Virus record (IMG/VR): IMGVR_UViG_3300020178_000002
Span: 124,001-188,000 of that record
Reading direction: 5' to 3' (one strand)
DNA length: 64,000 nucleotides
This document shows positions 13,013 through 59,198 of this stretch, one piece after another. A program made the translations under genes and the position numbers. Each line of letters begins with the position of its first letter. Position 1 is the stretch's first letter. Below the pieces are notes generated by a model. That model was given only the letters and a program-made list of their open reading frames with translations. It had not been told where the DNA came from and searched no databases.

Positions 13013-13103
13013 TACCTCTACTTATCAAATAGGGAGTAGGGGGTATTAAAAAAGTTTGTTAAAAAAATCATGCCCCCTCAGGCTCATTTGATAAGTAGAG
13101 GTA
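13013..13103. promoter_or_regulatory. Divergent promoter pair (CCCCC-N9-TTTGATAA on each strand) forming an 18-bp inverted repeat
   Basis: TACCTCTACTTATCAAAT (13013-13030) is the exact reverse complement of ATTTGATAAGTAGAGGTA (13086-13103); each copy has a C5 run 9 nt upstream of TTTGATAA; located between divergent genes. Confidence 0.7.
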
Positions 13104-13121
13104 TAGACGAAAGGAAATTAA

Positions 13122-14339
13122 ATGAAACGTAATCCATATGAACAAAAACACCCCTATTCCAACATTCGAGGGGCTTTTTACTCGGTATTAAGCCAGATGC
13201 CTCAAGATGTGAACACATCAGTGACTCATTCGGGTCAAACGTTTGCAATAAGTGGCACTTTTAAGTGGCTAGACTTTAGTAGATTCATTACTGATTGTCA
13301 CAAAGACCATGTATATTCTACTTTAATTAACAGAAGAATCGTGAAGAAAGATGTGACTCTTTATATTGCATCAGAGTTTGTGCTAAATGTGTGTGGTCTT
13401 TCTCAAAGTGAGGCAATTGCAGCAGGCTTACATGAAGGTGGACATGCTTTATGTGATATGGCTGGTTCAGACTACCCTAGTAGACAAGAATTCGACCAAC
13501 ATATCCTGCCTTACATCACTAATGAGCCAAGAGTATATTCAAATTCAGATCTAGGTAAATGGGTTAATGTACTCGCTGATGGTCGCCTTGAAAATGGAAT
13601 CAGCTTACAGTTTCCAGATGTTGAGAGGTACTTTTATGCAATTCAAAATTGGGTACACCGATTAGAAGCAGAGAATAGAGGTCAAGAGGCATCAAGTGAC
13701 TTTATGATGGCTCTTCGAGATGCTGTCAAAGGTTGGGATAATGAATCAGCGAGAGAGGTCTGGGAAGAATACTTGCCAGAAGCAAGAGATCTTGTAGAGA
13801 AACTAAAGCCAATTTGGTCAAAGGTTCTTCCAAAGAACACTAATTGGAATGAAACAGCTCATTTGCCACTCCAAGCAGCCTTAGAGATCGTCAATGCGAT
13901 CAAAGATGAGTTTGAAAATGAAAGCAAAAACCAACAGGGTCAAGATTCTCAAGATTCTGGTGGTCAAGGTTCTGGAGATCAAGATTCTGGTGGTCAAGGT
14001 TCTGATGATCAAGATTCTGATGATCAAGGCTCTGATGATCAAGATTCTGAAAGCCAAGATTCTGAAAGCCAAGATTCTGAAAGCCAAGATTCTGATGATC
14101 AAGGTCAACAAGGTCAAGACCAACAAGGTCAACAGGGTCAAGGTTCTCAAGATTCTCAAGGTTCAAGCAAAAAAGGCACACTTGAGATGTTAGAAGACCT
14201 CCTAAATGGAGAGGGCAAAGCCTTAGACCCAAATTCAGGTATGGCTGAAAACATGAGGCAAGTAGAAGAAAAACTTGGTCACAAGATTTATGTGCCAAAC
14301 AACAAACCAATAACAGAAGAAAAAAGAAGATTAAAATGA
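13122..14339 (+). CDS. CobT-N-like / HExxH metallopeptidase-like partner of the AAA+ ATPase, with acidic linker
   Basis: LHEGGH (HExxH) and NVLADGRLE motifs typical of VWA-associated N-terminal domains; QDS/QGS low-complexity tail. Confidence 0.7.
   Translation: MKRNPYEQKHPYSNIRGAFYSVLSQMPQDVNTSVTHSGQTFAISGTFKWLDFSRFITDCHKDHVYSTLINRRIVKKDVTLYIASEFVLNVCGLSQSEAIAAGLHEGGHALCDMAGSDYPSRQEFDQHILPYITNEPRVYSNSDLGKWVNVLADGRLENGISLQFPDVERYFYAIQNWVHRLEAENRGQEASSDFMMALRDAVKGWDNESAREVWEEYLPEARDLVEKLKPIWSKVLPKNTNWNETAHLPLQAALEIVNAIKDEFENESKNQQGQDSQDSGGQGSGDQDSGGQGSDDQDSDDQGSDDQDSESQDSESQDSESQDSDDQGQQGQDQQGQQGQGSQDSQGSSKKGTLEMLEDLLNGEGKALDPNSGMAENMRQVEEKLGHKIYVPNNKPITEEKRRLK
13941..14166 (+). repeat. Coding 15-bp tandem repeats (QDSDD/QDSES/QGSDD)
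   Basis: Units such as CAAGATTCTGAAAGC x3 and CAAGATTCTGATGAT. Confidence 0.9.
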
Positions 14340-15106
14340 GCAGCAGTATTGAATTAAAGGAAGTTAAAAAGAACCTATTAAAAGGCTCAAACCAAGTAAG
14401 AAGAGCATTAGAAGATTATGCTCGTGACCACACCACATATAAAGAGGGTGTGACTTTTAACAATAATAGAATGGTGTCTGGAGTAGCCAAGTCTAAACGA
14501 GGCTTAATCGACAACAAATTGTACAACACAAGAAAAAATGTAATCAAAGTGCAAGCAGGATTTAGTTTTGCCAGCGACCATAGTTCATCACTTAATTGGC
14601 ATGGCGATTGGGGTCAGATTTGTAAGCTAATTGGAGGTCTGCATGACCTCTCTGACAAGCTAAACATCAAGTCTCAATCAGCTCTAGTTAGGTTTGATTA
14701 TGATTGGGACATAGAGGGTTGTTCATCTCGGGCTATACCTCACATGGTTAGATTATTAGACCATAATCAAAAGTGGAAAGACTCATATCTTCCTCAAATC
14801 AAGAATATCCGCCCAAAAGGTGGCACAAGCCTTATCTCCTATGCAGAAGCTGCACTTAGATTAGCTAGGGAGATCCCTGATTGTACTCACAGAGTAGCTT
14901 TTTTCCTCACAGATGGAGAGTGTTCAGAAAAGGTCTACTTAGAGAGCTTGCGTCAATCTGCAGCAGCAGAGGGCATCCATCTAGTAGGTATTGGGCTAGG
15001 TGTAAAAGGTAAGGGATTACCTAATGGCATTGATGGAAGAAGTGCCGAAGAAATCAGTTTAAAGATGTGCAAGATTTTAACAGAAGTAATAAAAGGAAAG
15101 AAATAA
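14336..15106 (+). CDS. von Willebrand factor A (VWA) domain protein, CobT-C-like
   Basis: MIDAS elements DHSSS, GGT and FLTDGE, plus HLVGIGLG; ATGA overlap with the upstream gene. Confidence 0.85.
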   Translation: MSSSIELKEVKKNLLKGSNQVRRALEDYARDHTTYKEGVTFNNNRMVSGVAKSKRGLIDNKLYNTRKNVIKVQAGFSFASDHSSSLNWHGDWGQICKLIGGLHDLSDKLNIKSQSALVRFDYDWDIEGCSSRAIPHMVRLLDHNQKWKDSYLPQIKNIRPKGGTSLISYAEAALRLAREIPDCTHRVAFFLTDGECSEKVYLESLRQSAAAEGIHLVGIGLGVKGKGLPNGIDGRSAEEISLKMCKILTEVIKGKK

Positions 15107-15627
15107 TGAACCACCCACAAGTAGAATGTAGAAACAACAATTTAAATTACTTATTCACACTCAACCTCAAAGCTAGCTATAAAGACATCTTACAGCGTAG
15201 ACTAGCTATTCTGGAAGCTTGGGCTAGCAACCATAGCTTAGAGTCAGCCACAGAGCTAATCAATAACTCTATGAATGGCTACAGGGCAAAGCCAAAAGAG
15301 GTACAAAAAGCAATCTTTGGAACAAGAGGGATGATTACTTCAATCCGAAACTCTTTAAGTCGTCAAGGAAACTCTTACAATCCTTACCGACAAGTAAAGT
15401 TGGTTCGTAAAGAAGGTACTCCTTTCCTTGAAGAGCTAGGTACAAACCAACTCTGGATTCGAGGTGAGGTTATTAAAGGTCAAGCTCCACAGAAGAAAGT
15501 AAGTAATGTGCTGACTGCCATTAGACAGTGTGTAGAAAGCAACTTAAACCTACCTCTCTATATCCGCCATAAGATTGTAGAACATGATGAGACAGTTTGC
15601 CGAGATGCAAATGGAAACCCAGTATAA
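15106..15627 (+). CDS. Hypothetical protein
   Basis: Start moved to ATG 15106 (TAATG overlap with the VWA stop, AAAGGA SD). Confidence 0.7.
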   Translation: MNHPQVECRNNNLNYLFTLNLKASYKDILQRRLAILEAWASNHSLESATELINNSMNGYRAKPKEVQKAIFGTRGMITSIRNSLSRQGNSYNPYRQVKLVRKEGTPFLEELGTNQLWIRGEVIKGQAPQKKVSNVLTAIRQCVESNLNLPLYIRHKIVEHDETVCRDANGNPV

Positions 15628-15641
15628 AAGGAGATTAAACA

Positions 15642-16439
15642 ATGACTAGTTACTACAAAACAGTAAAAACAAATACATTCCTGATCCTAAATGAAAAAGG
15701 TCTGGCCATGACTAAGAAAGATATTGTAGCTGAATATCTAAGTCGTGATAGTTCACCAGAACACAACCAGGACAAGAAGCTATACAATAACATCAGTCAA
15801 GCTCTTAACAAGTTTAAGAAGCAAGGGTATATCATTAGCCCTGCTCGGGCTACCTATCAAATCAAAGAGGTTATTACAGACCTACAAACACTTGTAGACA
15901 GCAACAAAGACTTAGTGGCCACCAGCTTTGTTAGTCACAACCCTCAACCTACTACAACTACAGTAGTAGAGGAAGAAGCTACCACTACAGAGGAAGTACT
16001 CTATGTAGAGATCCCAGACCCTATTATTGAAGATCCTTTCTATATGGAGGAAGAAACAGTCATTCTTCCAGAGTGCGTATATTCCCCTCTGTCGCTAGAA
16101 GTTAGTCTGACTAATGGTAAGACCCTCACAGGAACTTATGAAGTGGCTAGACATGAAAATAACTTGCTTATTAAGAGTGGAGACAGAGTAGCGATTGTAT
16201 CTATGGAAGTAGAAGCCAATTCAGAGCATGATGCTATTAACACCTTTGTTGAGAAGGTAGTTGAAGACTTTCACCATGCACCTAATGATGTATATGGGGC
16301 TGAGAGATTCTGCAAAGTTCTTATGGTATGTGTTGACGCTCACAAGCATGACAGCCCATTAGGGGGGCTTGCTGATGACTGTCAAGACTCACTATGTCCT
16401 ATTCATAGCATTTGGTCTGATAAAGTAAAGATTGTCTAG
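15642..16439 (+). CDS. Protein with probable N-terminal winged-helix domain and C-terminal Cys/His cluster
   Basis: MTKKDIV...YNNISQALNKFKKQGYIISPARATYQI fits a wHTH pattern; C-terminal CVDAH...CQDSLCPIH; AAGGAG SD. Confidence 0.55.
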   Translation: MTSYYKTVKTNTFLILNEKGLAMTKKDIVAEYLSRDSSPEHNQDKKLYNNISQALNKFKKQGYIISPARATYQIKEVITDLQTLVDSNKDLVATSFVSHNPQPTTTTVVEEEATTTEEVLYVEIPDPIIEDPFYMEEETVILPECVYSPLSLEVSLTNGKTLTGTYEVARHENNLLIKSGDRVAIVSMEVEANSEHDAINTFVEKVVEDFHHAPNDVYGAERFCKVLMVCVDAHKHDSPLGGLADDCQDSLCPIHSIWSDKVKIV

Positions 16440-16869: not shown

Positions 16870-16891
16870 CCCCCCCTGTTCTCTTTGATAA
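16870..16891 (+). promoter_or_regulatory. CCCCC-N9-TTTGATAA promoter-like motif
   Basis: Same motif as 13073-13094; 30 nt upstream of ATG 16921. Confidence 0.6.
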
Positions 16892-16920: not shown

Positions 16921-17361
16921 ATGGTATACGATATGATTATGAACACGTTAGAGTCGCCCTTACTTTTGGGCACTGCTGCTTTCCTAGTGCTGACTGCTCT
17001 AGTGAAGCTACTAAGACCCAGCTCTGTTGAAGCACAGTTTAGAGATATGGTTGATCTCGATCTTTCCTCTCATGTTAGAGAGAAGATTCTTGAGATTCAG
17101 GAGAAGCACCCAGAGAGCTGTCGCTCTTGTTATGCCACTGCTACTAACCCTCTGTTCTTGACTGATGATTCCGAAGAGGAAGAGTGTCCTGATTGCTATG
17201 CGATTGGGCTTGACCCTTATGATACGGATAAGAAGCTGAAGAAGCAGGGTCAGTATATGGTGTCTACCCTGTATGGTGTAGATCCTCTTTACCGAGGGTA
17301 CTCGCTGCCAGGTGGTAAGCTACTTGCCATGATCGAAGATGATATGTCTGAAGATGATTGA
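16921..17361 (+). CDS. Membrane-anchored protein with two CxxC motifs
   Basis: Start moved to ATG 16921 (AAAGGA SD); N-terminal hydrophobic helix; CRSC and CPDC. Confidence 0.7.
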   Translation: MVYDMIMNTLESPLLLGTAAFLVLTALVKLLRPSSVEAQFRDMVDLDLSSHVREKILEIQEKHPESCRSCYATATNPLFLTDDSEEEECPDCYAIGLDPYDTDKKLKKQGQYMVSTLYGVDPLYRGYSLPGGKLLAMIEDDMSEDD

Positions 17362-18143: not shown

Positions 18144-18196
18144 GGGGGTTTTAGATTTTTCTAAGCCCCCTTTTTTGTTTTGATAATAAGGGTAAA
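18144..18196 (+). promoter_or_regulatory. Terminator-like hairpin fused to the CCCC-N8/9-TTTGATAA promoter motif (copy 1)
   Basis: GGGGG..TTAG/CTAA.CCCCC hairpin plus T run; 18167-18196 is identical to 18982-19011 (30 bp). Confidence 0.65.
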
Positions 18197-18214: not shown

Positions 18215-18613
18215 ATGGTATTTATTTACAGCAACAATTTCGGACATCTTGCACATAAGAGATTTTTTGATGTCTTGGAAGTGAATGGGGGAGAGGTATT
18301 AGCAAAGCTTGACAGTGGTGAGGATTTGCTAGTTTGCTTTGATGGTTTCTTAACAGAATTAGCAAATGGTCATGTGGTTTATGATGTGGGAGTATTTGAC
18401 CCAGAGAAGAGTTATGAGGATCTGGACAAGTACTATGGTTTGATAGTGGGGGATGTCTTACATATCAGCAAGTCATTCTCTGAGATAGAGAATAAGGCTT
18501 TTGATATGGGAGAGGGTCTTAACTTGGACAAGGCTGGTTCAGAGTTGGACAAGATAGAGGATTTGGAATCAGAATTGAAGTTGAAGAAAGAGAGGCTTGG
18601 TTATGTTAGGTGA
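18215..18613 (+). CDS. Hypothetical protein
   Basis: 132-aa ORF with AAAGGA SD, downstream of the promoter motif. Confidence 0.75.
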   Translation: MVFIYSNNFGHLAHKRFFDVLEVNGGEVLAKLDSGEDLLVCFDGFLTELANGHVVYDVGVFDPEKSYEDLDKYYGLIVGDVLHISKSFSEIENKAFDMGEGLNLDKAGSELDKIEDLESELKLKKERLGYVR

Positions 18614-18959: not shown

Positions 18960-19011
18960 GGGGGGGTTTAGAAAAAACTAACCCCTTTTTTGTTTTGATA
19001 ATAAGGGTAAA
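18960..19011 (+). promoter_or_regulatory. Terminator-like hairpin fused to the promoter motif (copy 2)
   Basis: GGGGTTTAG-A6-CTAACCCC plus T run plus TTTGATAATAAGGGTAAA. Confidence 0.65.
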
Positions 19012-19037: not shown

Positions 19038-19283
19038 ATGGATAGATTTTTAAGTTTAGTATCTTTGTTCTTTTTCCTCTTGGGTATATCTTGTTTTGGC
19101 AATTTGCCTATGCCTTACAAGGGTGGTTCAACAGGATATATTTGTGAGGGTTACGAGGGTATTCAGTTAGTAGAGATGATGACAACGAACAGTAGAAAGT
19201 TTTTTGGAGAAGACAAGGTGCTGTCTTATGCCTATATATATAAGACATGTGAGATAGTGGAGTTACCGACAAATGGGAATTAA
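19038..19283 (+). CDS. Putative small lipoprotein
   Basis: Start moved to ATG 19038 (AAGGAG SD); hydrophobic signal ending LGISC (lipobox-like). Confidence 0.6.
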   Translation: MDRFLSLVSLFFFLLGISCFGNLPMPYKGGSTGYICEGYEGIQLVEMMTTNSRKFFGEDKVLSYAYIYKTCEIVELPTNGN

Positions 19284-22133: not shown

Positions 22134-22169
22134 AGGCAGGTTCTCATATGAGGCTCTGCCTTTTTTTTT
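22134..22169 (+). terminator. Intrinsic terminator
   Basis: AGGCAG..CTCA-TA-TGAG..CTGCCT plus T run. Confidence 0.8.
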
Positions 22170-22212
22170 GTTTATAGTCTCCATGCATTATTAATGTGAA
22201 AGGCATGGAACT

Positions 22213-23049
22213 ATGAACAAAATACAGAGATTAGAAGCAAGAGTAGCTAGGCTTGAAAAAGAGTCTTTTATTTCGGCTCAAAAAGTATGGGATACAGCAA
22301 ACAGCATACTCCCTCAATTAAACAGGCTTAAGGGTGCTGCGAAAGAGCTGATTAGACTAGTGACAGGTGCTATACGCAGTGTTTGGGCAGAGTTGAATTT
22401 AATAGTTCGCAAGAAGAACAAGAAGAAGATACTTGGTTATTTGGAAGCTTCTTTTGAAGAAACTATAAAGAATGCTTTCCAGCCATTTGTCTCGGTGTCA
22501 GAGCCACCAGAGCTTGTGGCATTCTTGCCAGGCAATCTATTAGGTTCTACTTTTAGGTTCAAGAATAGGAAGTATCAGCTTAAAGAGTTATTAAGGCATG
22601 ATGCTGTGACAGGTCAAGGTGCTTACAATGCATATAATGAGTGGGTCACAGAGTATGGGTTATACTTGGACTATATGATGGATAAGTACCCAAGACCAGA
22701 CAGCAAAGTGGGCAAGAAGGTTGTTTATCAGATGATGGAGAACCTGAAAATAGGGAGACTTAGCAAACTTGCTTGGAAGTTTTTTAACATTTGGATAAAG
22801 GTAAGTTCCCAGATTGGTTTAGTGGTTGGTTTAGCGACAGCTTTATCTGCACTTTCTTTAGCTGTGGGTGTGAGAGGGGCAGTGAAAACATTTACTACTC
22901 TCCTTAATAATAAGATAGACAAGGAGATAGGTAAGACAGACTTAGCTAGTAATCCTTTGTTTGACCCTAACAAGACAGCCTCTCAAAGGAAGCTTTCATC
23001 TTTAGCTTTAGTGACCTTAGTGTTAGAGGACATTCACTATTCTTATTAG
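22213..23049 (+). CDS. Leader-tagged protein, distant member of the 27.8-32.7 kb hydrophobic paralog family
   Basis: Leader MNKIQRLEARVARLEKES; AYNEWVTEY matches AYxSWxxDY; hydrophobic stretch; KTAS before a short C-terminal tail. Confidence 0.75.
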   Translation: MNKIQRLEARVARLEKESFISAQKVWDTANSILPQLNRLKGAAKELIRLVTGAIRSVWAELNLIVRKKNKKKILGYLEASFEETIKNAFQPFVSVSEPPELVAFLPGNLLGSTFRFKNRKYQLKELLRHDAVTGQGAYNAYNEWVTEYGLYLDYMMDKYPRPDSKVGKKVVYQMMENLKIGRLSKLAWKFFNIWIKVSSQIGLVVGLATALSALSLAVGVRGAVKTFTTLLNNKIDKEIGKTDLASNPLFDPNKTASQRKLSSLALVTLVLEDIHYSY

Positions 23050-23095
23050 TTTTTTTATTGTTGCCAATAGGCAGAATAAACTAAGGACAAGAGCC

Positions 23096-34523: not shown

Positions 34524-34577
34524 CAGTATCTCCTTATTGTTTGTTATGTTATGTAGTTTATATAAATAGATTATTAA

Positions 34578-35516
34578 TTAGAAGTTGAAGATACAATCCT
34601 CAGGAAGTTTATCTTCTCTCCAACGCTCTAAGATAGGGTGACGAATAGCACCTGTCGGGTACTGTCCATACCCTTTAATTTCAGCAACACGACCTACGAA
34701 CTTTTCCATTTGGTCTCGAGGTCCTGTCTCTCCAAGAGAACCTACAACACGAAGATTGCCTTCTTTGTCATAGAATCCATAGTTGAGTCCTACATAACCT
34801 TTTGACCAAGGATCTGTGTGAAGACCCTCTGGGTAGAGTTTGCCATCAGTGCCAACCTCTCCAGGTCGGACTCTCCACTCGCTTGGCTTTGCATTAGCGT
34901 CTACAATCACAACGTCATAGTTGTCAGTAAACTTTAACTTAGCCCAAGAAGAACGGCTATTTGCTTTGTAAGGTGCGTTCACATCTTTTAGCATAATACC
35001 CTCATGTCCTCGCTCTAAAGCGATTTGCATGAGATCCTCAGTGTTATTCTCTCCCATGCTGTAAATCTCTGAAAGACAAAGATTTGAGAATGAAGAATCG
35101 AAAACACTTTCAAGGATAGCTCTACGCTCTTTCCATGAGAGGTCTCCTACATATTGTCCGTTGTGATAAACAATATCGAAAGCTGAAAAAACAAGGCTCT
35201 CTGGAGACTCGGCTCTAAGGTTGGAAACTCGGTCAGAACCCTCTGCACCTTCTCTGGGGATAATCTCTCCATCAAGAAGTGTTCCTGCTGGAACTTCTGC
35301 TTGAGCATGACTTAGACACTTAATGTCTTTTCCGATTCGTGACCATGCCACGTTATTTGAAATAAGACATCGGTGTCCATCGAGCTTCATTTCAGCAATG
35401 TAGTCTGATGACCCATTAACTTTATCCACCAACTTTTCTTTTGCAGTCTTCGCAAGTTGGGGGCGAAGAAACTTATAAACACCACAAGGTGAACTTACAT
35501 CAATTTTCTTTGGCAT
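34578..35516 (-). CDS. lig: ATP-dependent DNA ligase
   Basis: Motif I EMKLDGHR (KxDG), III LDGEI, IIIa FDIV, IV EGIMLK, V KLK, and OB-fold IRHP...WREDK. Confidence 0.92.
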   Translation of the reverse strand: MPKKIDVSSPCGVYKFLRPQLAKTAKEKLVDKVNGSSDYIAEMKLDGHRCLISNNVAWSRIGKDIKCLSHAQAEVPAGTLLDGEIIPREGAEGSDRVSNLRAESPESLVFSAFDIVYHNGQYVGDLSWKERRAILESVFDSSFSNLCLSEIYSMGENNTEDLMQIALERGHEGIMLKDVNAPYKANSRSSWAKLKFTDNYDVVIVDANAKPSEWRVRPGEVGTDGKLYPEGLHTDPWSKGYVGLNYGFYDKEGNLRVVGSLGETGPRDQMEKFVGRVAEIKGYGQYPTGAIRHPILERWREDKLPEDCIFNF

Positions 35517-35552: not shown

Positions 35553-35574
35553 TTATCAAATAGATAGGTGGGGG
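35553..35574 (-). promoter_or_regulatory. CCCCC-N9-TTTGATAA promoter-like motif upstream of the ligase
   Basis: Reverse complement reads CCCCC-ACCTATCTA-TTTGATAA. Confidence 0.65.
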
Positions 35575-36921: not shown

Positions 36922-36960
36922 TCTAGGATTCATATAAGTCCTCTTAAAAGGAGACTTATA

Positions 36961-39163: not shown

Positions 39164-39292
39164 AATTTCTTCCTTATCTTTTTATTTTAAAGACTCTAAC
39201 CATAAATAAGATACAAATCCTAGTTATTAGCACTCTTTCCTTATCCTATAGTTTATTTATTGTATAAGATAAGAAAAAAATAGGAGAAGAAA

Positions 39293-40195: not shown

Positions 40196-40270
40196 ATCTC
40201 CACTCTCTTTTAGATGATAGACTCTTTATAATTCACCTGAAGCGACAAACACAGCTAAGGAGGATTAAAG

Positions 40271-42186: not shown

Positions 42187-45100
42187 ATGGCTATCGAAGG
42201 AAGCAGCTATCTGCCACCTGGTGTCTATACCAACACCATTTTTGAAACACAAAACCAGAATCAAGCTCTGGTACAAGGTCGTGTGCCTACACTTATAGGT
42301 ACAGGTCGTGAAACAGTTATTAGTACAGGAAATATTCTTGTCAGAGGTTCATCTTCAACAGTAGATCAACGTATTGTAGAAGAAGACCCTACTGGAAGAA
42401 TGGTCTCTGGTGTAGATGGGAATGGAAATTACATCTACACTGATTATAGTGAGGGTGCTAACCAACTACAAGTTAGACACTTTCCTATTGTATCAGGAGA
42501 TGGTTCTGGAAGTACAACTAATGTCCCTAGCTCTGTAACAGTTTCTATTAATGGAACAAACACAGTCATTATCTCTTTAGATGGTGCAAATGGTTTGATC
42601 ACTTTAGCAGAAGCACCTAAAGAGGGTGATGATGTAAGAGTCTCTTACTTCTTTAATAGAACAGACACTTTGGTAGAGGGTGAAAACCTTTCAAGCCAAG
42701 TATCTCCTCAAGACACAGAGCTTTTGGGTAGCAACTCTAACTTTGTTATTGATGCAAGCTCAAATACTCTTATCCTTACTGTGGATGGCGAGACTGGTGT
42801 TATCACTCTCCCTAATGGAGCCGCTGGTGATAGAGCCAACTCTCTACAAAGAGTTATTGCTACTCTTAATGGTGCTGGTCTAGCAACCCTCGAAGCAGAC
42901 TCTTACACTGATGCAGAAGGCAATGACAATCTTATCCTTACTGCAAAAGGTTCTATTCTTGTAGGTAATGGTACAGCGAATTTCTCTGTTGGTGTTTATA
43001 ACAACCAAACAGGAACAGCTCGTAATCGTACTTTCTACACTCAATATGGACCTATTGTAGATGGAAGCAATGGTGGTGTGGTCACTACCGACACATCACT
43101 TGTCACTATCCGAGTTAATGGTGTTGAAGTGACACCTGCTTCTGTCGATGGTGCAAATGGATCTATTACTTTAGCTCTAGCTCCTGTAGTAGACTCAAGC
43201 ATTGAGGTTGATTACTACCACAATACATTCCAAGATCAGTTTGATTACATTCCAGGCAGAGACATTACCTCTATCGACAGAGTTTCTTTAGTTGCTTCTG
43301 GTGGTGGTGGACCATCTTTGTTTGTTCAAGATGTTGACTTTGTTCTTTCAGAGGATCGAATTGTCTGGGGATCTGCTTCTGTGGTATCTGCTGGTTCAAT
43401 TCAAGAGGGTGAAGTTGCTTTCGGAAGCAATCAAATCAGTTCTTCTTTAAGAGATGAGAAAGCATATCTTGTTGAATGTTCTTCTGTTTCAACAACAACT
43501 ATCCCACCTCGAGTTCTCTCAAATACTTTCAAGCTTCCTTTCCAACCTGTAGATGGTTCAGGTTTAGGTAAACCAACTAGAAGAACAGATCTCGTTGAAG
43601 TAAGAACTGGGGTTTCTTTAGCAGATGCTTTGGAGAGAAGTCCTGCCACAGTTGTTAAAGTAGACCCTGTAAATTCACAAGTGGTTCTATCCTCAGCAGT
43701 TCCAACAAACCATAAGGTTTTTGCAAGCTTCTACTACTCAAACATCCAAGACAGCTTTGGCACTTCAGCTTATGTTGTGGAGGTAGAGAGTGTTGGTGCT
43801 TCTGGCATTGGTACATATTCTCTTTCATCTCCTACTAGAACCTTCTATAGTGTTGATTTGGAGAGTAAGGGTGTAGATCTTCAAGAAGTTACTTTAACAT
43901 TCCCTTCTGGATCTGAAGCAAGATCTGGTGCTAGGATTGCTGATGGAACTCCTGTTTCAGAGAATGTGACTGTTGAAATCAGAAACTATGATGAAACACC
44001 TGCATTTTTCTTCTCTGAAGGCTTTGGTGACTACTTCCTAATTCAAGGTTCTTCTGACACCTTAGCGATGGAAATTGATCTTCAAGCAACTACTGTTGAT
44101 TTTTCTGCCCCAATGGGTGCTGGTAGAAATGGTAATATTACAACAGTTGTCGGTGGGGTTCTTCCTTATGATGCTGCATCTAACAATACCAACTATGGTG
44201 CAACAGCTTTAACAAGAGCTATGACTCTTACTGTTGATGGTATTACATTTGCAGAGGCTTCAATTAATGGTGTTGGTGATGATGTAGAAGATTGGGTTTC
44301 TGCAATCAATACTGTTGCTGATGCAGAAGCACCTGTTTACACTTCAATGTCAGCATTTGGTGCTTGGGAAGCTAAAGCCAACACCTATGCCTCTTTCAAG
44401 TTCAGATATGTAGGTGATAGCAATGGTTCAAGTGTTGCTACTGCTACTATCCAAGCTGCTGTGTATTTAAGTCAAACAGATCTTGCTAATGCTGTATCTA
44501 CAGCTATCACGAATGCAATCGCAAATGATATTGTAAATGCAAATGCAGACTTCACAGGGTTAAGCTTAACCTGTGGTGTAGATAGCTTGAGTAGATTGAC
44601 TTTCTCATTGGACTCGCTTCCTAATCTGAATGATACTTATGGCTTCATTGAGTTTATTTCAGATACAGATACCTCGTTCTTAACAATTGCTGGTATTGAC
44701 TATGATACTGAAAATAACACTACAAATGGAAATGGTACTCAGACTAAGTTCGGATATCTTCCTGTAGCAGCTTTCTCAAGAACAACCCTTACCTCTGGAG
44801 AGCTTAGAGATAGACTCATCCTTAAGGGCAGAACTGTGGTTGGTAATTCTTACTATCCTGTTTCTGACCTTGGTGTTTCAATTGATCAAGGTACAAGAGT
44901 AGAGGATGCTGGTTTTGAAGTTGGAACAGTAGTTCCTTCAGTAAGAACATCAGTAGTAGATGCTCCAAGTATTCTTTTGAGACTCGGTTGGTCAGAAGTT
45001 GATGGCGATGGTATACCTGCAAAGACTCTTTACAGCACAGGCAATGACCAGAACAACACTCTATCTTTAGAGATTGATGGTCAGACTATCAACATCACTC

Positions 45101-46998
45101 TAAATGATGCTACTGCTCAAGGTAATCTGACTTCAATTACAGATATCCTAACAGACATTTCTGGAGACTTGGCTGGAAGTGCTACTGCACATATTGAGGG
45201 TGCTGGTATTCGCATTGTAAATGCTAATGCAAACATCAGCTCTTACATTAAAGTTGGTGCAGGCACAGGGAACAGTGCATTTGGTGTCACAGAGGGAGAT
45301 TCTGTCTCTGCTGTGGGTGTAAGTGCTAAAGCTGTTGTTTCTTCTCTTATGAGTCATTCTGAAGCTAAAGCTAATTTCTCTACCTCTTTGTTCTCAACAG
45401 AGCCACAAGCAAATGCTGCTGTTGGTTATTATGCAGACAAAGCTGTTGCATATGTGTTCAAGAATCAAGTTGGCAGAGAGTATGTTGGATTTGAGAGTCT
45501 TTCTACAGGAAATTCATCTATCCTTGAAGTCACTGGTGGAAGAATTGCAACAACTAAGGGCAATGGTCTTAAGCTTGTTGTAGGCTCTGGTGCAGTAGGT
45601 GAGGAAGCATATCAAGGATTTGTTGTTACTTCAGACAATGCACAAGGTTCTGGTTCTGCAAACACCTCTCGACTAAATGATGCTGTTGGTGCAGATGGTA
45701 TCATTGGTCAAACATATATAGATGAAGTGACAGGCTTAACCTTTACTTTACTTGAGAGAGAAGGTGGTATTGATTATCCTACAGGTGCAGATGCACAGAT
45801 TAGTTTCAAGGTAGGTACTGTCTTCACATCTAATGCGAATATCCCGACTCCAGCTATTCCAGGTGTTTCATTGATTGTATCTAACACTTTAGATACTTCT
45901 ATTGGTGATACTGCATTGGTTGAAGTTTTTAATAAAGAAGGTAATGAGCCAAACTTAGGTCAGGTTTATTATGTTGACTTTACTAGAATTCGTACTGAGT
46001 TTAATACTCGTACCTTCTCTAGTCTTGCAGATGTCATTTCAACCTATGGTGAGATCAGCCCAAATAACTCTTTGAGTCTTGGTGCTTTGTTAGCTTTCTC
46101 AAATGGTGCAACTGCAATAGCCTGTAAGCAAGTTCAACTTGAAGCAGGAGAGTCAAGCTTAAGTGAAGATCAAGTGGTTCAAGCAATCCAAGACCTTGAG
46201 GGTGAGATTGTTCCAGGATTGACACCATCTGTTATTGTTCCTTTGTACCCAGCCACTACAGCGATTGTTTCTGCAATCTCTAACCACTGTGACATTCAGT
46301 CCTCTTTGCGTTATCGTTCAGAGCGTAGAGCTGTTTTGGGTGTAAGAGCTGGAACACAACCTAGAGAAGTACAGTCTCTAGCACAATCTGCAAACAACAC
46401 AAGAATCTGTATTGTCTATCCAGACCTTGCAAACGTTTCTTATGTAGATGGAAATGGTATCACTCAAACAATTCTTGTCGGTGGTGAGTATGTTGCTGTT
46501 GCAACAGCTTTAGCAACAAGCAATCCTTCTATTGATAGTGCTACTCCTTGGACAGGTCGTTCTATTGCAGGTATTTCTTCACTTGCTCGTCTACTTGACG
46601 AGGTAGATGCAAATGCAACTGCAAATGCAGGTGTTACAGTTCTTTCTCAAAGAGCTGATGGCATTAAGGTAAGACATGGCTTAACTACAAACATGACTTC
46701 TGTTCTTACAAAGACTCCTACTGTTATCCAGATTGCAGATGACGTTCAGATTCGCTCTAGGAACTTACTTTCACGCTATGTAGGGGTTAAGTTCGTACCT
46801 CAAGTGATTCAGCAAATAGAGGGTAGATTAAACGCTTTCTTTAAGCAACTTGTAAGAGATCAAATCATTTCAACTTACACAGGTCTTTCAGTGTCGAGAG
46901 ATGCAACTGACCCAACTCAGTTGAATGTTGAAGTTTTCTACAAGCCTGTTTACCCACTTCTATATATCCAATTTACTTTCACAGTACAGGGTAGCTAA
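42187..46998 (+). CDS. Contractile tail sheath protein (1603 aa, large insertions)
   Basis: N-terminal YLPPGVYT; C-terminal sheath domain (HCDIQSSLRYRSERRAV, VRHGLTT, YVGVKF, VEVFYKPVYPLLYIQFTFTV). Confidence 0.9.
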   Translation: MAIEGSSYLPPGVYTNTIFETQNQNQALVQGRVPTLIGTGRETVISTGNILVRGSSSTVDQRIVEEDPTGRMVSGVDGNGNYIYTDYSEGANQLQVRHFPIVSGDGSGSTTNVPSSVTVSINGTNTVIISLDGANGLITLAEAPKEGDDVRVSYFFNRTDTLVEGENLSSQVSPQDTELLGSNSNFVIDASSNTLILTVDGETGVITLPNGAAGDRANSLQRVIATLNGAGLATLEADSYTDAEGNDNLILTAKGSILVGNGTANFSVGVYNNQTGTARNRTFYTQYGPIVDGSNGGVVTTDTSLVTIRVNGVEVTPASVDGANGSITLALAPVVDSSIEVDYYHNTFQDQFDYIPGRDITSIDRVSLVASGGGGPSLFVQDVDFVLSEDRIVWGSASVVSAGSIQEGEVAFGSNQISSSLRDEKAYLVECSSVSTTTIPPRVLSNTFKLPFQPVDGSGLGKPTRRTDLVEVRTGVSLADALERSPATVVKVDPVNSQVVLSSAVPTNHKVFASFYYSNIQDSFGTSAYVVEVESVGASGIGTYSLSSPTRTFYSVDLESKGVDLQEVTLTFPSGSEARSGARIADGTPVSENVTVEIRNYDETPAFFFSEGFGDYFLIQGSSDTLAMEIDLQATTVDFSAPMGAGRNGNITTVVGGVLPYDAASNNTNYGATALTRAMTLTVDGITFAEASINGVGDDVEDWVSAINTVADAEAPVYTSMSAFGAWEAKANTYASFKFRYVGDSNGSSVATATIQAAVYLSQTDLANAVSTAITNAIANDIVNANADFTGLSLTCGVDSLSRLTFSLDSLPNLNDTYGFIEFISDTDTSFLTIAGIDYDTENNTTNGNGTQTKFGYLPVAAFSRTTLTSGELRDRLILKGRTVVGNSYYPVSDLGVSIDQGTRVEDAGFEVGTVVPSVRTSVVDAPSILLRLGWSEVDGDGIPAKTLYSTGNDQNNTLSLEIDGQTINITLNDATAQGNLTSITDILTDISGDLAGSATAHIEGAGIRIVNANANISSYIKVGAGTGNSAFGVTEGDSVSAVGVSAKAVVSSLMSHSEAKANFSTSLFSTEPQANAAVGYYADKAVAYVFKNQVGREYVGFESLSTGNSSILEVTGGRIATTKGNGLKLVVGSGAVGEEAYQGFVVTSDNAQGSGSANTSRLNDAVGADGIIGQTYIDEVTGLTFTLLEREGGIDYPTGADAQISFKVGTVFTSNANIPTPAIPGVSLIVSNTLDTSIGDTALVEVFNKEGNEPNLGQVYYVDFTRIRTEFNTRTFSSLADVISTYGEISPNNSLSLGALLAFSNGATAIACKQVQLEAGESSLSEDQVVQAIQDLEGEIVPGLTPSVIVPLYPATTAIVSAISNHCDIQSSLRYRSERRAVLGVRAGTQPREVQSLAQSANNTRICIVYPDLANVSYVDGNGITQTILVGGEYVAVATALATSNPSIDSATPWTGRSIAGISSLARLLDEVDANATANAGVTVLSQRADGIKVRHGLTTNMTSVLTKTPTVIQIADDVQIRSRNLLSRYVGVKFVPQVIQQIEGRLNAFFKQLVRDQIISTYTGLSVSRDATDPTQLNVEVFYKPVYPLLYIQFTFTVQGS

Positions 46999-56545: not shown

Positions 56546-56563
56546 TAGGAAAGGAAGTATATT

Positions 56564-57442
56564 ATGAGTAATACAGTTGATAATTCAGTAAAACAAAAGA
56601 TCATTAGCGACTACATCAAGACCCCTCAAGGTCGTGCAAAGCTAGCTGCTTCAATGACTCAACCTCTTCGTCTTCGCCGTGACTATACAAGCGTTGGTCG
56701 TAAGACCTTCCTTGTTGAGCAACTTCCTGATGGTGCGTTGCCTATTTACGACAAAGACCCAGACGTAACAGCTTTCGTAGTTGGTGAAGAAGGCGAGAAC
56801 ATTCTTGCTATCACCAAGCCTCGTCGTGTTATCTTCCCTCTCTTTGAGATTGCTTCTAACCCTGAGATTCCTTTAACTCAGATCAAGGAAAGACGCTTCG
56901 ATCTTATCGAGAGAGCACAGGATCTTGCTAGAGCACAAATTCAGGCTGCTGAAGACGAGCGTGTATTCGCTATTCTTGACGCAGTTGCAGCTAATGGTTT
57001 CGACAGCGTTTCTGGTCAAACCAATGCTGACATTCCTGTTATCGCTCCTCTTAATGGTGCTGTTCTTGCTGACGCATACAGCCTAATTGAGAGACATGAC
57101 CTTAGAGTTGCCCGTGTATTTATGAATGCTAGAGACTATGCTGACATTCGTAAGTTCGGTCGTGACATTCTCGATATCGAGAGTCAAGCAGCCCTTCTCA
57201 AGACAGGTCTACAAGCAACTCTTTGGGGTGCTCAAATCATCACAAGTCGTCTTGTTCCTGTTGGTACAGTTTATGTTTGTTGTGAGCCAGAAATGTTCGG
57301 TCGTATCCCTGTTCGTACAGAGTTGACTGTTCTTTCTGCTGACGATCCAAAAGCTCGTACAATCGGCTTCTCTTGCTTCGAGAATCTAGGTATCGGTGCT
57401 TATAACCCTCGTGGTCTTGCTAGACTTACTGTTACTCGCTAA
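56564..57442 (+). CDS. Major capsid protein (HK97 fold)
   Basis: 292 aa; PLFEIASNPEI...RRFDLIERAQ...IQAAEDERVF, VFMNARDYADIRK, LWGAQIITSRLVPVG; strongly biased codons; terminator follows. Confidence 0.88.
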   Translation: MSNTVDNSVKQKIISDYIKTPQGRAKLAASMTQPLRLRRDYTSVGRKTFLVEQLPDGALPIYDKDPDVTAFVVGEEGENILAITKPRRVIFPLFEIASNPEIPLTQIKERRFDLIERAQDLARAQIQAAEDERVFAILDAVAANGFDSVSGQTNADIPVIAPLNGAVLADAYSLIERHDLRVARVFMNARDYADIRKFGRDILDIESQAALLKTGLQATLWGAQIITSRLVPVGTVYVCCEPEMFGRIPVRTELTVLSADDPKARTIGFSCFENLGIGAYNPRGLARLTVTR

Positions 57443-57492
57443 TCATTAGCTAAGTAAATGACCTAGAGTCTAGGTCAAGGGTTATCGAAATT

Positions 57493-57527
57493 AAACCTCA
57501 ACTTCTTCTGGGAGTTGGGGTTTTTTT
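57493..57527 (+). terminator. Intrinsic terminator of the capsid operon
   Basis: AAACCTCAACTTC / GGAGTTGGGGTTT stem plus T run. Confidence 0.85.
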
Positions 57528-57628
57528 ATTTATAGTCCTCCTTAGCTTTGATACTACTTAAAACTTGATCATTCCAAACCCTAGTATTTCGTTTATAGCT
57601 CCCATAGACAAAACAAGGAGTAAAAAAA

Positions 57629-58231
57629 ATGAAGCTGTTCAATACAAAAAGAAGCCTAGCAATACATCCAGGTAGTCTTAGACTAAACCACACCAAGTTC
57701 TTAAACGATTGGTCTAGAAGTAAAGCAGGACCTAAAGATTTTGTTATCTTCTTTAAAGGTGGAAAGTACCTTAAAGTCTCTTTCAACCAGAACTCTCCTC
57801 ACTATAAGAGATCTGTACCGAAGTTTGACAGAAATAAGGTGTTTGGTCTTGCTACTAAAATTCCAAGAGATGGGAAATGGCAATTTGTAGCTTATGTTTA
57901 TGACAATGAACATAATCTGAGACAACTAACTGTCACAGGAGAAACCACTGCCAGAAAAGCTCTCAAAAAAGGTATTCTTGAAATGAGAGAGTATTATGTT
58001 CGCATAAACGGACTCCTTTTAAGAAGTCCAGAAAAAAAACTAGAAGATGCCCTCAAGTCACATGATTGGTGGCACATGATGAGCGATGACCATAGAGTAT
58101 GGAGAGCTGGTGAGAGTAGTATGGAGAAAATCAAGAGCCTGTTAGATAAAGTGGACGATGCCACAGGTAAAGAACTTTGGTTAAAGTATGCACCAGATCA
58201 GTTTAAAGGTTATTATAGTAACAACTCTTAA
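57629..58231 (+). CDS. Hypothetical protein with C-terminal HDW...SDD motif
   Basis: LKSHDWWHMMSDDHRVWRAG; AAGGAG SD; TA-N5-TTTAT upstream. Confidence 0.7.
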   Translation: MKLFNTKRSLAIHPGSLRLNHTKFLNDWSRSKAGPKDFVIFFKGGKYLKVSFNQNSPHYKRSVPKFDRNKVFGLATKIPRDGKWQFVAYVYDNEHNLRQLTVTGETTARKALKKGILEMREYYVRINGLLLRSPEKKLEDALKSHDWWHMMSDDHRVWRAGESSMEKIKSLLDKVDDATGKELWLKYAPDQFKGYYSNNS

Positions 58232-58249
58232 CTTTAAGGAGATGACTCA

Positions 58250-58786
58250 ATGAGGATCTTTCTGTTTTTACTATTCTTGACCCTTCCCTTATCTGCTCAT
58301 GCAGAAGAAGAACCTATACATAGACCTTGGGAAGCTAGTCTTGGTAATACCCAAATGTTTATTGGCTGGTATAAAAAGGGTTCTTACCCTGTACCAACTT
58401 CTTCTGCCACTTTAATTCTTTCAAGAGAAGTGGTTTTTGACTTCTCATTGTGGGCTGTATTCAATCTCCCTCTTAATTCTAACAGAAGAGTTACAGAAGA
58501 GGGTTTACTTGTAGAGAGCCAAACACCACCTACTTTTATGTTAGGTCTTAGTTATGAGTTTATCAGGTATGGAATGAGTGAGGGTAGGAGTCTAGGTCTT
58601 GATGCAGGATTTTCTGTAGGTAGACCTCTAACTCTTGAGGGTCAACTCTTTCCTGTAGGTGCGTTTAGATTAAAACTCCTTACAAAACAAGATAGCTCTA
58701 TGTATGCTGGAATAACAACCTCACCTTATAACCCAGAGGGTGATTTGGTTTGGGGCTTGATCTCTGGCATGGGATATAAGTTTTAA
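58250..58786 (+). CDS. Secreted, probable outer-membrane beta-barrel protein
   Basis: Signal peptide ending AHA; alternating amphipathic strands; C-terminal GMGYKF. Confidence 0.6.
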   Translation: MRIFLFLLFLTLPLSAHAEEEPIHRPWEASLGNTQMFIGWYKKGSYPVPTSSATLILSREVVFDFSLWAVFNLPLNSNRRVTEEGLLVESQTPPTFMLGLSYEFIRYGMSEGRSLGLDAGFSVGRPLTLEGQLFPVGAFRLKLLTKQDSSMYAGITTSPYNPEGDLVWGLISGMGYKF

Positions 58787-58852
58787 AAAAAAGTACCCCC
58801 CTTTAATTAATCAGATAACAATAAGTATCTATTTTATTAAAGGAGAAAAATT

Positions 58853-59113
58853 ATGAATGAGAAGATTGTATTAAGTATTTTGTTTGTTCTAGGTATTGCA
58901 GCACTTGTCTATGGTCTTAATAGAGAGAGCCTTGAAAGTGCTGTAGGTGAGGACAAGACATACAGCATTAGCTGTGAAACCCCAAAGGGTTGGGTAGAGT
59001 ACAAGACCCACAGAAAACCTTTTGAAGCAAGTTGGAGGCGAGGTGGGGTTTGGTATTTTGAAACCCTAGAGGGTAAGAACATTACCTCTACCAAGTGTCA
59101 CAGCGAAGAATAA
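58853..59113 (+). CDS. Small membrane-anchored protein
   Basis: N-terminal TM; two Cys; AAGGAG SD; variant CCCCCC-N9-TCAGATAA upstream (58796-58818). Confidence 0.7.
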   Translation: MNEKIVLSILFVLGIAALVYGLNRESLESAVGEDKTYSISCETPKGWVEYKTHRKPFEASWRRGGVWYFETLEGKNITSTKCHSEE

Positions 59114-59198
59114 TAAGTTATCTCTCTAAAATAAGAAACCCCATAGGTTTTTTTGATAATAGGCTTATTAGCAGTCATTAATCAAAGGAGTGTAAAAG

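What the first reader, a model, noticed from the sequence alone, without database searches (positions are those of the whole stretch)
13022..59159. Non-canonical promoter class CCCC(C)-N8/9-TTTGATAA
Seen at 13022-13043(-), 13073-13094, 16870-16891, 18166-18186, 18982-19001, 35553-35574(-) and 59139-59159, with a variant at 58796-58818. All copies are intergenic, about 27-40 nt upstream of a start codon, in the gene's orientation, and usually preceded by an A or T tract. They mostly precede accessory genes, the AAA+/VWA module and the ligase. The motif does not match sigma70 TTGACA-N17-TATAAT. Inference: an early/middle promoter read by a phage-encoded or unusual host factor.
Basis: partly seen in the sequence, partly recalled or inferred. 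Interest (0 to 1): 0.6.

Follow-up and report, generated by a model that had tools for sequence, protein, structure and literature searches.

The report
Phage-specific promoter class, C-run plus TTGATAA
A short two-part DNA signal (a run of C, 8-9 bases, then TTGATAA) sits just upstream of 23 non-structural genes of an uncultured 312-kb jumbo phage. It is very probably a phage-specific promoter, possibly read through a divergent sigma factor that the phage encodes; this is a familiar kind of phage regulation with a new sequence.

Summary
The window lies in a 312,136-bp virus record. A weight-matrix scan of the whole genome finds 23 sites. All 23 are intergenic, all point the same way as the next gene, and 22 lie 27-47 nt before a start codon. 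None scores above 12 inside genes, and none above 8 in a reversed-genome control.

The consensus is an A/T-rich tract, CCCCC, N8-9, (T/A)T(T/C)GATAA, then W-A at +8/+9. Only 3-4 C-runs double as terminator arms.

Genes downstream are non-structural: MoxR-like AAA+ ATPase, DNA ligase, SNF2 helicase, MetRS, pentapeptide proteins and small ORFs.

Relatives with about 55% protein identity lack the motif. Orthologous genes there carry a different clade-specific signal, GTAACCCCTTATYTATA. A second class, TAGTyTnTTTATA, is conserved in both.

I found no phage RNA polymerase, MotA or AsiA. The genome does encode a divergent two-domain sigma-70-family protein (genome 5319-5933, minus strand). A distant relative that carries a homologue of it has FliA-type promoters (CTAAA-N15-GCCGATAG).

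Best reading: a phage-specific early/middle promoter, with TTGATAA as the -10 box. The start site and the factor that reads it are not shown.

The parts
13022..13043 (-). Class-A site CCCCC-N9-TTTGATAA, 39 nt before the ATG of the MoxR-like AAA+ gene 11807-12982(-); one half of a divergent pair
   Evidence: (score 35.8); gene:
13073..13094 (+). Class-A site CCCCC-N9-TTTGATAA, 27 nt before the ATG of 13122-14339(+), 405 aa with no family match; other half of the divergent pair
   Evidence: (score 40.9); orthologues in G001/G002 carry GTAACCCCTTATCT... upstream
16870..16891 (+). Class-A site C7-N7-CTTTGATAA, 29 nt before the ATG at 16921 (146-aa ORF)
   Evidence: (score 31.5)
18166..18186 (+). 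Class-A site CCCCC-N8-TTTGATAA, 28 nt before the ATG at 18215. Its C-run is also the 3' arm of a terminator-like hairpin (about 18144-18170) followed by a T-run
   Evidence: score 36.2; hairpin -15.0 kcal/mol
18982..19001 (+). Class-A site CCCC-N8-TTTGATAA, 36 nt before the ATG at 19038. Its C-run is also the 3' arm of a terminator-like hairpin (about 18960-18985) followed by a T-run
   Evidence: score 34.9; -8.9 kcal/mol
35553..35574 (-). Class-A site CCCCC-N9-TTTGATAA, 36 nt before the ATG of the ATP-dependent DNA ligase 34578-35516(-)
   Evidence: PF01068, E 9e-22; score 33.9; the G001 orthologue (72% identity) carries TAACCCCTAATCTATA upstream
58796..58818 (+). Weak variant CCCCCC-N8-TCAGATAA, 34 nt before the ATG at 58853 (86-aa ORF)
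   Evidence: (score 16.5)
59139..59159 (+). Class-A site CCCC-N9-TTTGATAA, 39 nt before the ATG at 59199 (188-aa ORF). Next on the same strand are a 299-aa ORF (59903-60802), which has its own class-B-like box about 44 nt upstream, and the topoisomerase IB gene (60900-62267)
   Evidence: (score 29.9)

Best explanation
The motif is a phage-specific promoter class of an uncultured 312-kb jumbo phage. (T/A)T(T/C)GATAA is the -10-type box. By analogy with the FliA-type box GCCGATAA at -15 to -8, the A of 'GA' would be the flipped -11 base, and transcription would start 8-9 nt after the box, at the conserved W-A. The C-run then lies at about -29 to -25 and an A/T-rich tract lies further upstream. 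The class drives non-structural genes for DNA metabolism, host takeover and accessory functions, so it is probably early or middle. In that model the C-terminal helix-turn-helix reads the upstream element and the sigma-2-like domain reads the GATAA box. Shown here: the motif, its statistics, its position relative to genes, its replacement by another signal at orthologous genes in relatives, and the presence of a sigma-like gene.
For: There are 23 sites, all intergenic and co-oriented, 27-47 nt before start codons, with none in genes or in a reversed-genome control. Internal spacing is fixed at 8-9 nt. Position +8 is W in 23/23 sites and +9 is A in 17/23. Relatives G001 and G002 share 210 and 132 of 330 proteins at a median 55% identity. 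They have no class-A sites (one weak hit, score 13.5, in G002) but 101 and 63 copies of yGTAACCCCTTATyTATA. Orthologues of class-A genes carry that signal in 4 of 9 cases (G001) and 4 of 5 (G002), against about 3-4% of other orthologues (Fisher p 3e-4 and 5e-5). For the sigma candidate: TIGR02937 matches nearly full length in the protein (E 9e-5) and, below threshold, in all 7 homologues tested. The family profile's best PDB match is a sigma-H factor. The AlphaFold model has pLDDT 80 and shows four helices, a linker, then four helices. All of the top ~50 Foldseek PDB matches are sigma factors, including phiEco32 gp36 and sigma-28. Contigs whose sigma is 62-70% identical carry C-rich-N-ATTGATAA sites, while the 55% clade carries the GTAACCCC signal. 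Between those two clades the helix-turn-helix is the least conserved part of the protein (44% against 81% for the core-binding part). The distant relative LR745208.1 has a homologue of the sigma, and about 38 of its upstream regions carry CTAAAAAgt-N11-GCCGATAGG only 15-25 nt before start codons. That is the FliA geometry described in PMC12784957, and the GATA box there can only be a -10 element. No multisubunit or T7-like RNA polymerase, MotA or AsiA was found.
Against: No transcript 5' ends were available. The sigma matches are all below the curated cut-offs. If GATAA is the -10 box, the C-run (about -29 to -25) lies 3-5 bp closer to it than a canonical -35 element, so a standard sigma-4 contact is not a natural fit. 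The sigma factor could equally serve the second class (TAGTyTnTTTATA). Motif type and sigma clade are both inherited vertically, so their agreement is not independent evidence. No class of promoter that the unmodified host enzyme would use first has been identified with confidence. The host is unknown.
Confidence: 0.5

Rival explanations
1. The host sigma factor reads the site with phage help. A host sigma (the primary one, or a FliA-like one) reads the imperfect GATAAK box, and a phage DNA-binding protein bound to the C-run near -27 supplies the missing -35 contact, as MotA/AsiA do at T4 middle promoters.
For: The upstream element lies 11-14 bp from the -10-like hexamer, the same geometry as the T4 MotA box (own knowledge). 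The genome encodes other helix-turn-helix proteins conserved in the relatives: a 189-aa protein with two sigma-4-like HTH domains at genome 209720-210289(-), and a Myb/GcrA-like protein at 120025-120618(-). The GATAA core matches the FliA -10 box (PMC12784957).
Against: There are no MotA or AsiA homologues. The box lacks the GCC of FliA promoters and has no positioned TAAA. The position that would be -7 is G as often as T, which is poor for a primary sigma. Only one canonical FliA-type site exists in the genome, and it lies inside a gene. The near-invariance of the boxes exceeds what host housekeeping promoters usually show.
Confidence: 0.22
2. The motif is an operator rather than a promoter. 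A phage regulator binds the C-run/TTGATAA site, which overlaps promoters of another kind.
For: The two short conserved blocks with fixed spacing would also suit a two-domain DNA-binding protein. One site (genome 14555) has TTTGATAA in an inverted repeat with TTATCAAA.
Against: No other conserved promoter-like element accompanies the 23 sites within the 27-47 nt left before the start codons. Strict co-orientation with genes and the W-A at +8/+9 fit a promoter. Palindromy is absent at the other sites.
Confidence: 0.08
3. The C-run is only the descending arm of intrinsic terminators of the upstream genes, and TTGATAA alone is the promoter. The coupling would then be a by-product of terminator-promoter junctions.
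For: At window 18166 and 18982 and at genome 2438 the C-run pairs with an upstream G-run and is followed by a T-run. G-run and C-run words are enriched in intergenic DNA generally.
Against: Only 6 of 23 C-runs pair with an upstream G-run. Two of those are just the divergent pair facing each other, and one lacks a T-run. The 3' end of the C-run keeps an 8-9 nt distance from the box whether or not a hairpin is present. Only 2 intergenic, co-oriented TTTGATAA boxes lack a C-run.
Confidence: 0.05
4. An undetected phage-encoded RNA polymerase, carried in the virion or made early, reads the motif as a single-enzyme promoter, as in N4, phiKZ or crAss-like phages.
For: Many large proteins of this phage have no family match. 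In relatives the orthologous signal is a 17-nt near-invariant block ending in TATA, which looks like a T7-group promoter.
Against: Pfam models for both multisubunit catalytic subunits and for T7-like polymerases find nothing. The only conserved DxDGD protein looks like a baseplate hub. No T7-type motif B/C was found outside the DNA polymerase. A sigma factor in the genome implies that host core enzyme is used.
Confidence: 0.07

Closest known systems
phiEco32 gp36-dependent middle/late promoters (PMC12276001)
   Same: The phage encodes a distant two-domain sigma homologue that replaces the host sigma on host core enzyme. Its promoters have a phage-specific -10-region consensus unlike TATAAT. 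gp36 (PDB 9m7y_F) is among the structural matches of the protein found here.
   Different: The gp36 consensus is AATGTA centred at -11.5. It has no C-run element and works with a co-factor, gp79. There is no detectable sequence similarity to gp36, and the phage here is a 312-kb myovirus-like jumbo phage, not a 77-kb podovirus.
Sigma-28 / FliA / sigma-D promoters, TCTAAAG(-36..-30) and GCCGATAA(-15..-8) (PMC12784957)
   Same: The GATAA core of the -10 box is shared. The spacer is C/G-rich. A distant relative of this phage (LR745208.1) has the full FliA-type architecture, CTAAA-N15-GCCGATAG, at about 38 upstream regions.
   Different: Here GCC is replaced by TTT (or ATT, TTC). There is no positioned TAAA. 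The conserved upstream element is a C-run lying where FliA promoters have their non-conserved spacer. The downstream genes have nothing to do with flagella.
T4 middle promoters (MotA box at -30 plus a sigma-70 -10 element; sigma appropriation by AsiA/MotA); own knowledge
   Same: The architecture is alike: a -10-type element plus an upstream element closer than -35 (11-14 bp), in front of genes for DNA metabolism.
   Different: The MotA box sequence (TGCTTtA) is absent, and there are no MotA or AsiA homologues.
SPO1 gp28 and gp33/34 sigma cascade (mentioned in PMC13401047) and T4 late promoters (TATAAATA, gp55); own knowledge
   Same: Temporal promoter classes are defined by phage sigma-like proteins. 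The second class here, TAGTyTnTTTATA, is a single extended -10-type block, like T4 late promoters.
   Different: The consensus sequences differ. Only one sigma-like gene was detected here, and no gp55 or gp33 homologues were sought or found.

Membership tests
Canonical sigma-70 promoter | TTGACA-N16-18-TATAAT with T-12, A-11 and T-7 | tested here: not met
   If TTGATA were the -35 element, the -10 would fall on the ribosome-binding site. As a -10 element, GATAAK has G at -12 and G as often as T at -7. Genome-wide, canonical matches are not enriched in intergenic DNA (5 of 63).
Sigma-28/FliA-type promoter | -10 box GCCGATAA, including the GC extended -10 | tested here: inconclusive
   The GATAA core is invariant in 23/23 sites, but the three preceding bases are TTT, ATT, TTC or similar, never GCC.
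Sigma-28/FliA-type promoter | -35 TAAA placed 15 bp upstream of the -10 box | tested here: not met
   The region is A/T-rich, but no TAAA sits at a fixed position and the C-run occupies -29 to -25. The full pattern occurs once in the genome, inside a gene. It is met in the relative LR745208.1.
T4 middle (MotA-dependent) promoter | MotA box (a/t)(a/t)(a/t)TGCTTtA centred at -30, plus MotA and AsiA proteins | tested here: not met
   The motif has a C-run instead. PF09114 and PF09010 are absent from the genome.
Phage-sigma-dependent promoter class (phiEco32 / SPO1 type) | The phage encodes a sigma-70-family protein | tested here: met
   The 204-aa ORF at genome 5319-5933(-) has these supports: TIGR02937 nearly full length at E 9e-5, below the cut-off; all 7 homologues tested also match below threshold; the family profile's best PDB match is a sigma-H factor; the fold is sigma-2 plus sigma-4, and all of the top ~50 structural matches are sigma factors.
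Phage-sigma-dependent promoter class (phiEco32 / SPO1 type) | The phage sigma binds core RNA polymerase and starts transcription at these sites | not testable with these tools
   This needs in vitro transcription or 5'-end mapping.
Intrinsic terminator (as the explanation of the C-run) | GC-rich hairpin followed by a T-run | tested here: not met
   This holds at 3 of 23 sites only. 17 of 23 C-runs are unpaired.
Single-subunit (T7/N4-like) or multisubunit phage RNA polymerase promoter | The phage encodes such a polymerase | tested here: not met
   PF00940, PF00562, PF00623 and PF04542 give no match at E <= 1. The control search for PF00940 found nothing in any genome, so that single result is weak. 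Motif searches found nothing convincing.

The most novel reading that the evidence does not exclude
A lineage of uncultured jumbo and huge phages carries its own two-domain sigma factor, and its promoter specificity has changed clade by clade. LR745208.1 has a canonical FliA-type site (CTAAA-N15-GCCGATAG). G001/G002 have GTAACCCCTTATYTATA. This phage and its nearest kin have C-run-N8/9-TTGATAA. The most distant kin examined, a 528-kb phage, has GGATCATCT-N12/13-AGAGTAG. That would be a natural series of mutually orthogonal sigma/promoter pairs, with an unusually short distance between the upstream element and the -10 box.
Probability: 0.3. Interest if true: 0.65.

Novelty: new variant of a known kind. 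Interest (0 to 1): 0.5.

Why it matters
Temporal promoter classes have been defined experimentally in only a handful of jumbo phages, nearly all of which bring their own RNA polymerases. This is an uncultured clade that appears to rely on host core enzyme plus a very divergent sigma factor. It has at least two sharply defined promoter classes that can be read directly from the sequence. One class is replaced by a different signal in sister clades while the other is kept. That gives an annotation key for a genome in which most genes have no family match: it marks which genes belong to which expression class. It also offers a testable case of sigma/promoter co-divergence and candidate orthogonal expression parts. 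If the sigma link fails, what remains is still a well-supported but ordinary finding: a phage-specific promoter consensus.

Tried and rejected
- **Phage RNA polymerase.** Pfam models for Rpb2_6, Rpb1_2 and the T7-like polymerase gave nothing. The 1363-aa protein with a conserved DMDGD motif (genome 61133-65224) looked like a candidate, but it has no PDB or Pfam match and its ESM-Atlas neighbours are Mu gpP / gp44-like baseplate hub proteins, so I rejected it.
- **Sigma70_r2 Pfam model alone.** It missed the sigma factor. The broader TIGR02937 model found it.
- **TTGACA-16-TATATT upstream of the sigma gene.** It lies inside the neighbouring divergent gene, and its conservation in kin can be explained by coding constraint. 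I do not use it as evidence.
- **Function of genes behind the second promoter class.** Of ten tested against PHROGs, two had a match and neither settles the matter (an unnamed family and a GroEL-like chaperonin). The label 'late/structural' for class B therefore remains a guess.
- **Nearest annotated phages.** None was found by DNA. By DNA polymerase, only the unannotated LR745208.1 at 44% identity.
- **Host.** The phage MetRS is closest (about 50%) to MAGs labelled Alphaproteobacteria. This is too weak to name a host.
- **Orthologue mapping to LR745208.1.** It failed: only 23 shared proteins in the first 260 kb, and none of them sits behind a box.
- **Contig ends as proxies for transcript ends.** They gave nothing.
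- **Not run.** I did not run complex prediction, because a pass would not tell which promoter class the sigma factor reads. Only genetic code 11 was used.


Full report
**1. Where the window lies**

The window is bases 124001-188000 of a 312,136-bp IMG/VR virus record with direct terminal repeats, estimated 100% complete. GC content is about 38%. The window has no tRNA genes and no DNA-level relative among deposited phages. My own simple gene caller gave 330 genes covering 92.6% of the genome. Strong Shine-Dalgarno words (AAGGAG, AAAGGA) dominate the upstream regions.

**2.

- CCCC-N7-10-TTTGATAA occurs at seven distinct places in the window, against 0.01 expected.
- TTTGATAA alone is not enriched. 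The signal is its coupling to the C-run.
- Across the whole genome, the relaxed pattern with WTTGATAA gives 18 sites.
- A weight matrix built from those 18 finds 23 sites scoring above 11.5.
- All 23 are intergenic. The best in-gene scores are 11.2 and 8.5, and a reversed-genome control has nothing above 8.
- All 23 point towards the next gene. 21 have a Shine-Dalgarno sequence, a start codon and an ORF of at least 30 codons; 20 of them lie 27-47 nt downstream (median 38) and one at 78. One more site has a called gene at 38 nt.

**3. Anatomy of the motif**

Positions are counted from the last A of TTGATAA, taken as 0.

- Positions -32 to -24 are A/T-rich.
- C is present in 16-18 of 18 sites at -20 to -17.
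- The spacer is 8-9 nt and weakly T-rich.
- Next comes W-T-T/C-G-A-T-A-A.
- Downstream: K at +1, A at +2/+3, G at +4 and +6, W at +8 (23/23) and A at +9 (17/23).
- Outside these blocks there is no similarity, so this is not a dispersed repeat.

**4. The C-run is not a terminator by-product**

Six of the 23 C-runs can pair with an upstream G-run. Two of these are simply the divergent pair at 13022/13073 facing each other, and one has no T-run. The remaining three are terminator-like: window 18166, window 18982 and genome 2438. At those three sites the C-run seems to serve twice.

**5. What lies downstream**

The genes behind class-A sites are:

- a MoxR-like AAA+ ATPase, supported by a weak AAA_5 match and PHROG 249;
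- an ATP-dependent DNA ligase;
- an SNF2 helicase, a methionyl-tRNA synthetase, pentapeptide-repeat proteins, a DUF6011 protein and, as second gene in a unit, a C5 DNA methylase;
- many small ORFs with no family match.

No recognisable virion gene follows a class-A site. Early or middle expression is therefore a reasonable inference, but it has not been measured. No VWA domain was detected in the neighbouring genes I tested.

**6. Other upstream signals in the same genome**

- *Class B.* TAGTyTnTTTATA lies 30-49 nt before about 32 genes.
- *CATATAA.* This box lies 15-40 nt before about a dozen genes.
- *tTGTATAATa.* This lies before tRNA genes near 307-309 kb.
- *Canonical sigma-70 promoters.* TTGACA-N16-18-TATAAT matches are not enriched between genes (5 of 63).

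**7. Relatives**

The DNA polymerase finds IMG/VR relatives at 65-72% identity. I fetched two of them whole: G001 (375,691 bp) and G002 (226,698 bp). They share 210 and 132 of the 330 proteins, at a median identity of 55%.

Neither has a convincing class-A site: the exact pattern is absent from both and the matrix gives one weak hit (13.5) in G002. Their upstream regions are dominated by two other signals:

- yGTAACCCCTTATyTATA, with 101 and 63 copies of the TAACCCC core;
- ttAATAGTTTnTTTATA, which is plainly the counterpart of class B.

Orthologues of class-A genes (the AAA+ ATPase, its divergent neighbour, the ligase and the DUF6011 protein) are preceded in G001/G002 by the GTAACCCC signal. 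The counts are 4 of 9 and 4 of 5, against about 3-4% of other orthologues, with Fisher p values of 3e-4 and 5e-5.

So the regulatory position is conserved while the sequence has been replaced in one class and kept in the other. That pattern fits a lineage-specific recognition factor better than a host housekeeping sigma.

**8.

There is no match to multisubunit RNA polymerase, T7-like polymerase, MotA or AsiA. The Sigma70_r2 model alone also found nothing.

The broad sigma-70-family model TIGR02937 does match a 204-aa ORF at genome 5319-5933 (minus strand), over positions 8-162 of 165, at E 9e-5. This is below the curated cut-off. The supporting evidence is consistent:

- All seven homologues tested, from other phages, match the same model, likewise below the cut-off.
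- One distant homologue is labelled a sigma-24 family protein by JGI.
- The alignment shows the familiar blocks: DPEEVLQEVYKGILIRNKGKCPFD...STY, and a C-terminal helix-turn-helix.
- The family profile's best PDB match is a sigma-H factor.
- The AlphaFold model has pLDDT 80 and shows four helices, a disordered linker, then four helices.
- All of the top ~50 Foldseek PDB matches are sigma factors, among them ECF sigma-L, sigma-H and sigma-E, phiEco32 gp36 and sigma-28.

I accept it as a divergent two-domain sigma factor. Two further helix-turn-helix proteins are conserved in the relatives: genome 209720-210289 and 120025-120618.

**9. Does the sigma factor go with this class?**

The evidence is circumstantial.

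- Contigs whose sigma is 62-70% identical (L081, L083, L085) carry C-rich-N-ATTGATAA sites before genes. In L081, a CCCCC-N8-ATGTATAA site lies 57 nt upstream of a tRNA cluster.
- The clade whose sigma is about 55% identical (G001) carries the GTAACCCC signal instead.
- Between the two clades, the C-terminal helix-turn-helix is the least conserved part of the protein (44% identity). The core-binding block is 81% identical and the whole protein 59%. Class B is conserved across both clades, so the divergent DNA-reading helix fits the divergent class better.
- All of this is confounded by common descent.

**10. A more distant relative gives the best clue to the box**

LR745208.1 is 485 kb, 56% GC, 44% identical in DNA polymerase, and carries a homologue of the sigma factor. 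In its first 260 kb, about 38 of 220 upstream regions hold cGATTTCrCTAAAAAgt, then 11 C-rich bases, then GCCGATAGGgtattgagg. This lies only 15-25 nt before the start codon.

That is the FliA/sigma-28 architecture: -35 TCTAAAG at -36 to -30 and -10 GCCGATAA at -15 to -8, with the A at -11 flipped out (PMC12784957). So close to the start codon, the GATA box can only be a -10 element.

By resemblance, TTTGATAA in this phage would be the same kind of box with GCC changed to TTT. The start site would then fall 8-9 nt downstream, which is exactly where W-A is conserved. The C-run would lie at about -29 to -25, in or next to what is the spacer in FliA promoters.

That is 3-5 bp closer than a canonical -35 element. 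It is the main weakness of a plain two-domain sigma model, and the reason an activator-assisted model remains a serious rival.

A 528-kb phage holding a still more distant homologue shows yet another two-block signal, GGATCATCT-N12/13-AGAGTAG.

**11. Comparison with known systems**

[quoted passage not shown] The closest sequence analogue is the FliA box (PMC12784957). The geometry recalls T4 middle promoters, but their proteins and box are absent.

The finding is therefore a new variant of a known kind of regulation. The consensus, the C-run element and the clade-to-clade replacement are new. The principle is not.

**12. Limits**

- I have no transcript data.
- Gene calls are my own and crude.
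- The host is unknown. The only hint is a MetRS about 50% identical to those of MAGs labelled Alphaproteobacteria.
- The sigma assignment rests on sub-threshold sequence matches plus a predicted fold.

Noticed in passing
window about 22168-22176(+), 23047-23058(+), 34561-34569(-), 39249-39260(+), 40218-40229(+), 59850-59858(+); about 32 sites genome-wide: A second promoter-like class, TAGTyTnTTTATA, lies 30-49 nt before start codons. It is conserved as ttAATAGTTTnTTTATA in relatives G001/G002, unlike the class under study. It may be the late class, but the functions of the downstream genes are unknown.
   Followed up: partly
genome 5319-5933(-) = L009:5319-5933:-, outside the window: A divergent two-domain sigma-70-family protein of 204 aa, syntenic with a thymidine kinase gene in all kin. 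All family matches are below the curated thresholds. The predicted fold matches sigma factors only.
   Followed up: yes
LR745208.1 (loci L118-L130): About 38 of 220 upstream regions carry a textbook FliA/sigma-28-type promoter, CTAAAAAgt-N11-GCCGATAGG, 15-25 nt before start codons, in a 485-kb uncultured phage. Either its own sigma factor has FliA-like specificity or it uses the host's FliA.
   Followed up: partly
G001 and G002 (loci L035-L065): The 17-nt signal yGTAACCCCTTATyTATA occurs 101 and 63 times (TAACCCC core). It is often followed by a GAGG...CCTC hairpin and sometimes by a TCATATAA box. It aligns in register with the second class (TTAATAGTTTGTTTATA), differing mainly at four positions (CCCC against TAGT).
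   Followed up: partly
L132 (JGI 3300025697, 528-kb contig): Another two-block upstream signal, GGATCATCT-N12/13-AGAGTAG, appears before several small genes around a distant homologue of the sigma factor.
   Followed up: no
genome 307085-309100, outside the window: tTGTATAATa occurs three times in the tRNA region. Two copies lie 10 and 48 nt upstream of tRNA-Met and tRNA-Arg. It is an extended -10-like box distinct from the other classes. The genome has 6 tRNA genes.
   Followed up: partly
window 14436-14442, 36931-36937 and about a dozen more sites genome-wide: A CATATAA box lies 15-40 nt before about a dozen start codons. It occurs as TCATATAA 55 times in G001, sometimes in tandem downstream of the GTAACCCC signal. 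It may be the class read by the host sigma factor.
   Followed up: partly
window 185-9208(-): A 3007-aa ORF with no Pfam match at all, lying downstream on the same strand as the AAA+ gene cluster.
   Followed up: no
window 42187-46998(+): A 1603-aa protein whose C-terminus matches the phage tail-sheath C-terminal domain and whose N-terminus weakly matches DUF2460. That is an unusually long sheath-like protein.
   Followed up: no
window 60900-62267(+): A eukaryotic/poxvirus-type topoisomerase IB domain (PF01028, E 4e-17), which is rare in phages.
   Followed up: no
genome 28900-30426(+), 20241-21185(+), 291060-291995(-): A phage-encoded methionyl-tRNA synthetase and two pentapeptide-repeat proteins sit directly behind, or in the same unit as, class-A sites. 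The MetRS is about 50% identical to those of MAGs labelled Alphaproteobacteria.
   Followed up: partly
genome 209720-210289(-) and 120025-120618(-): Two conserved small DNA-binding proteins: one with two sigma-4-like HTH domains, the other with Myb/GcrA-like and sigma-4-like HTH domains. They are candidate co-regulators of one of the promoter classes.
   Followed up: partly
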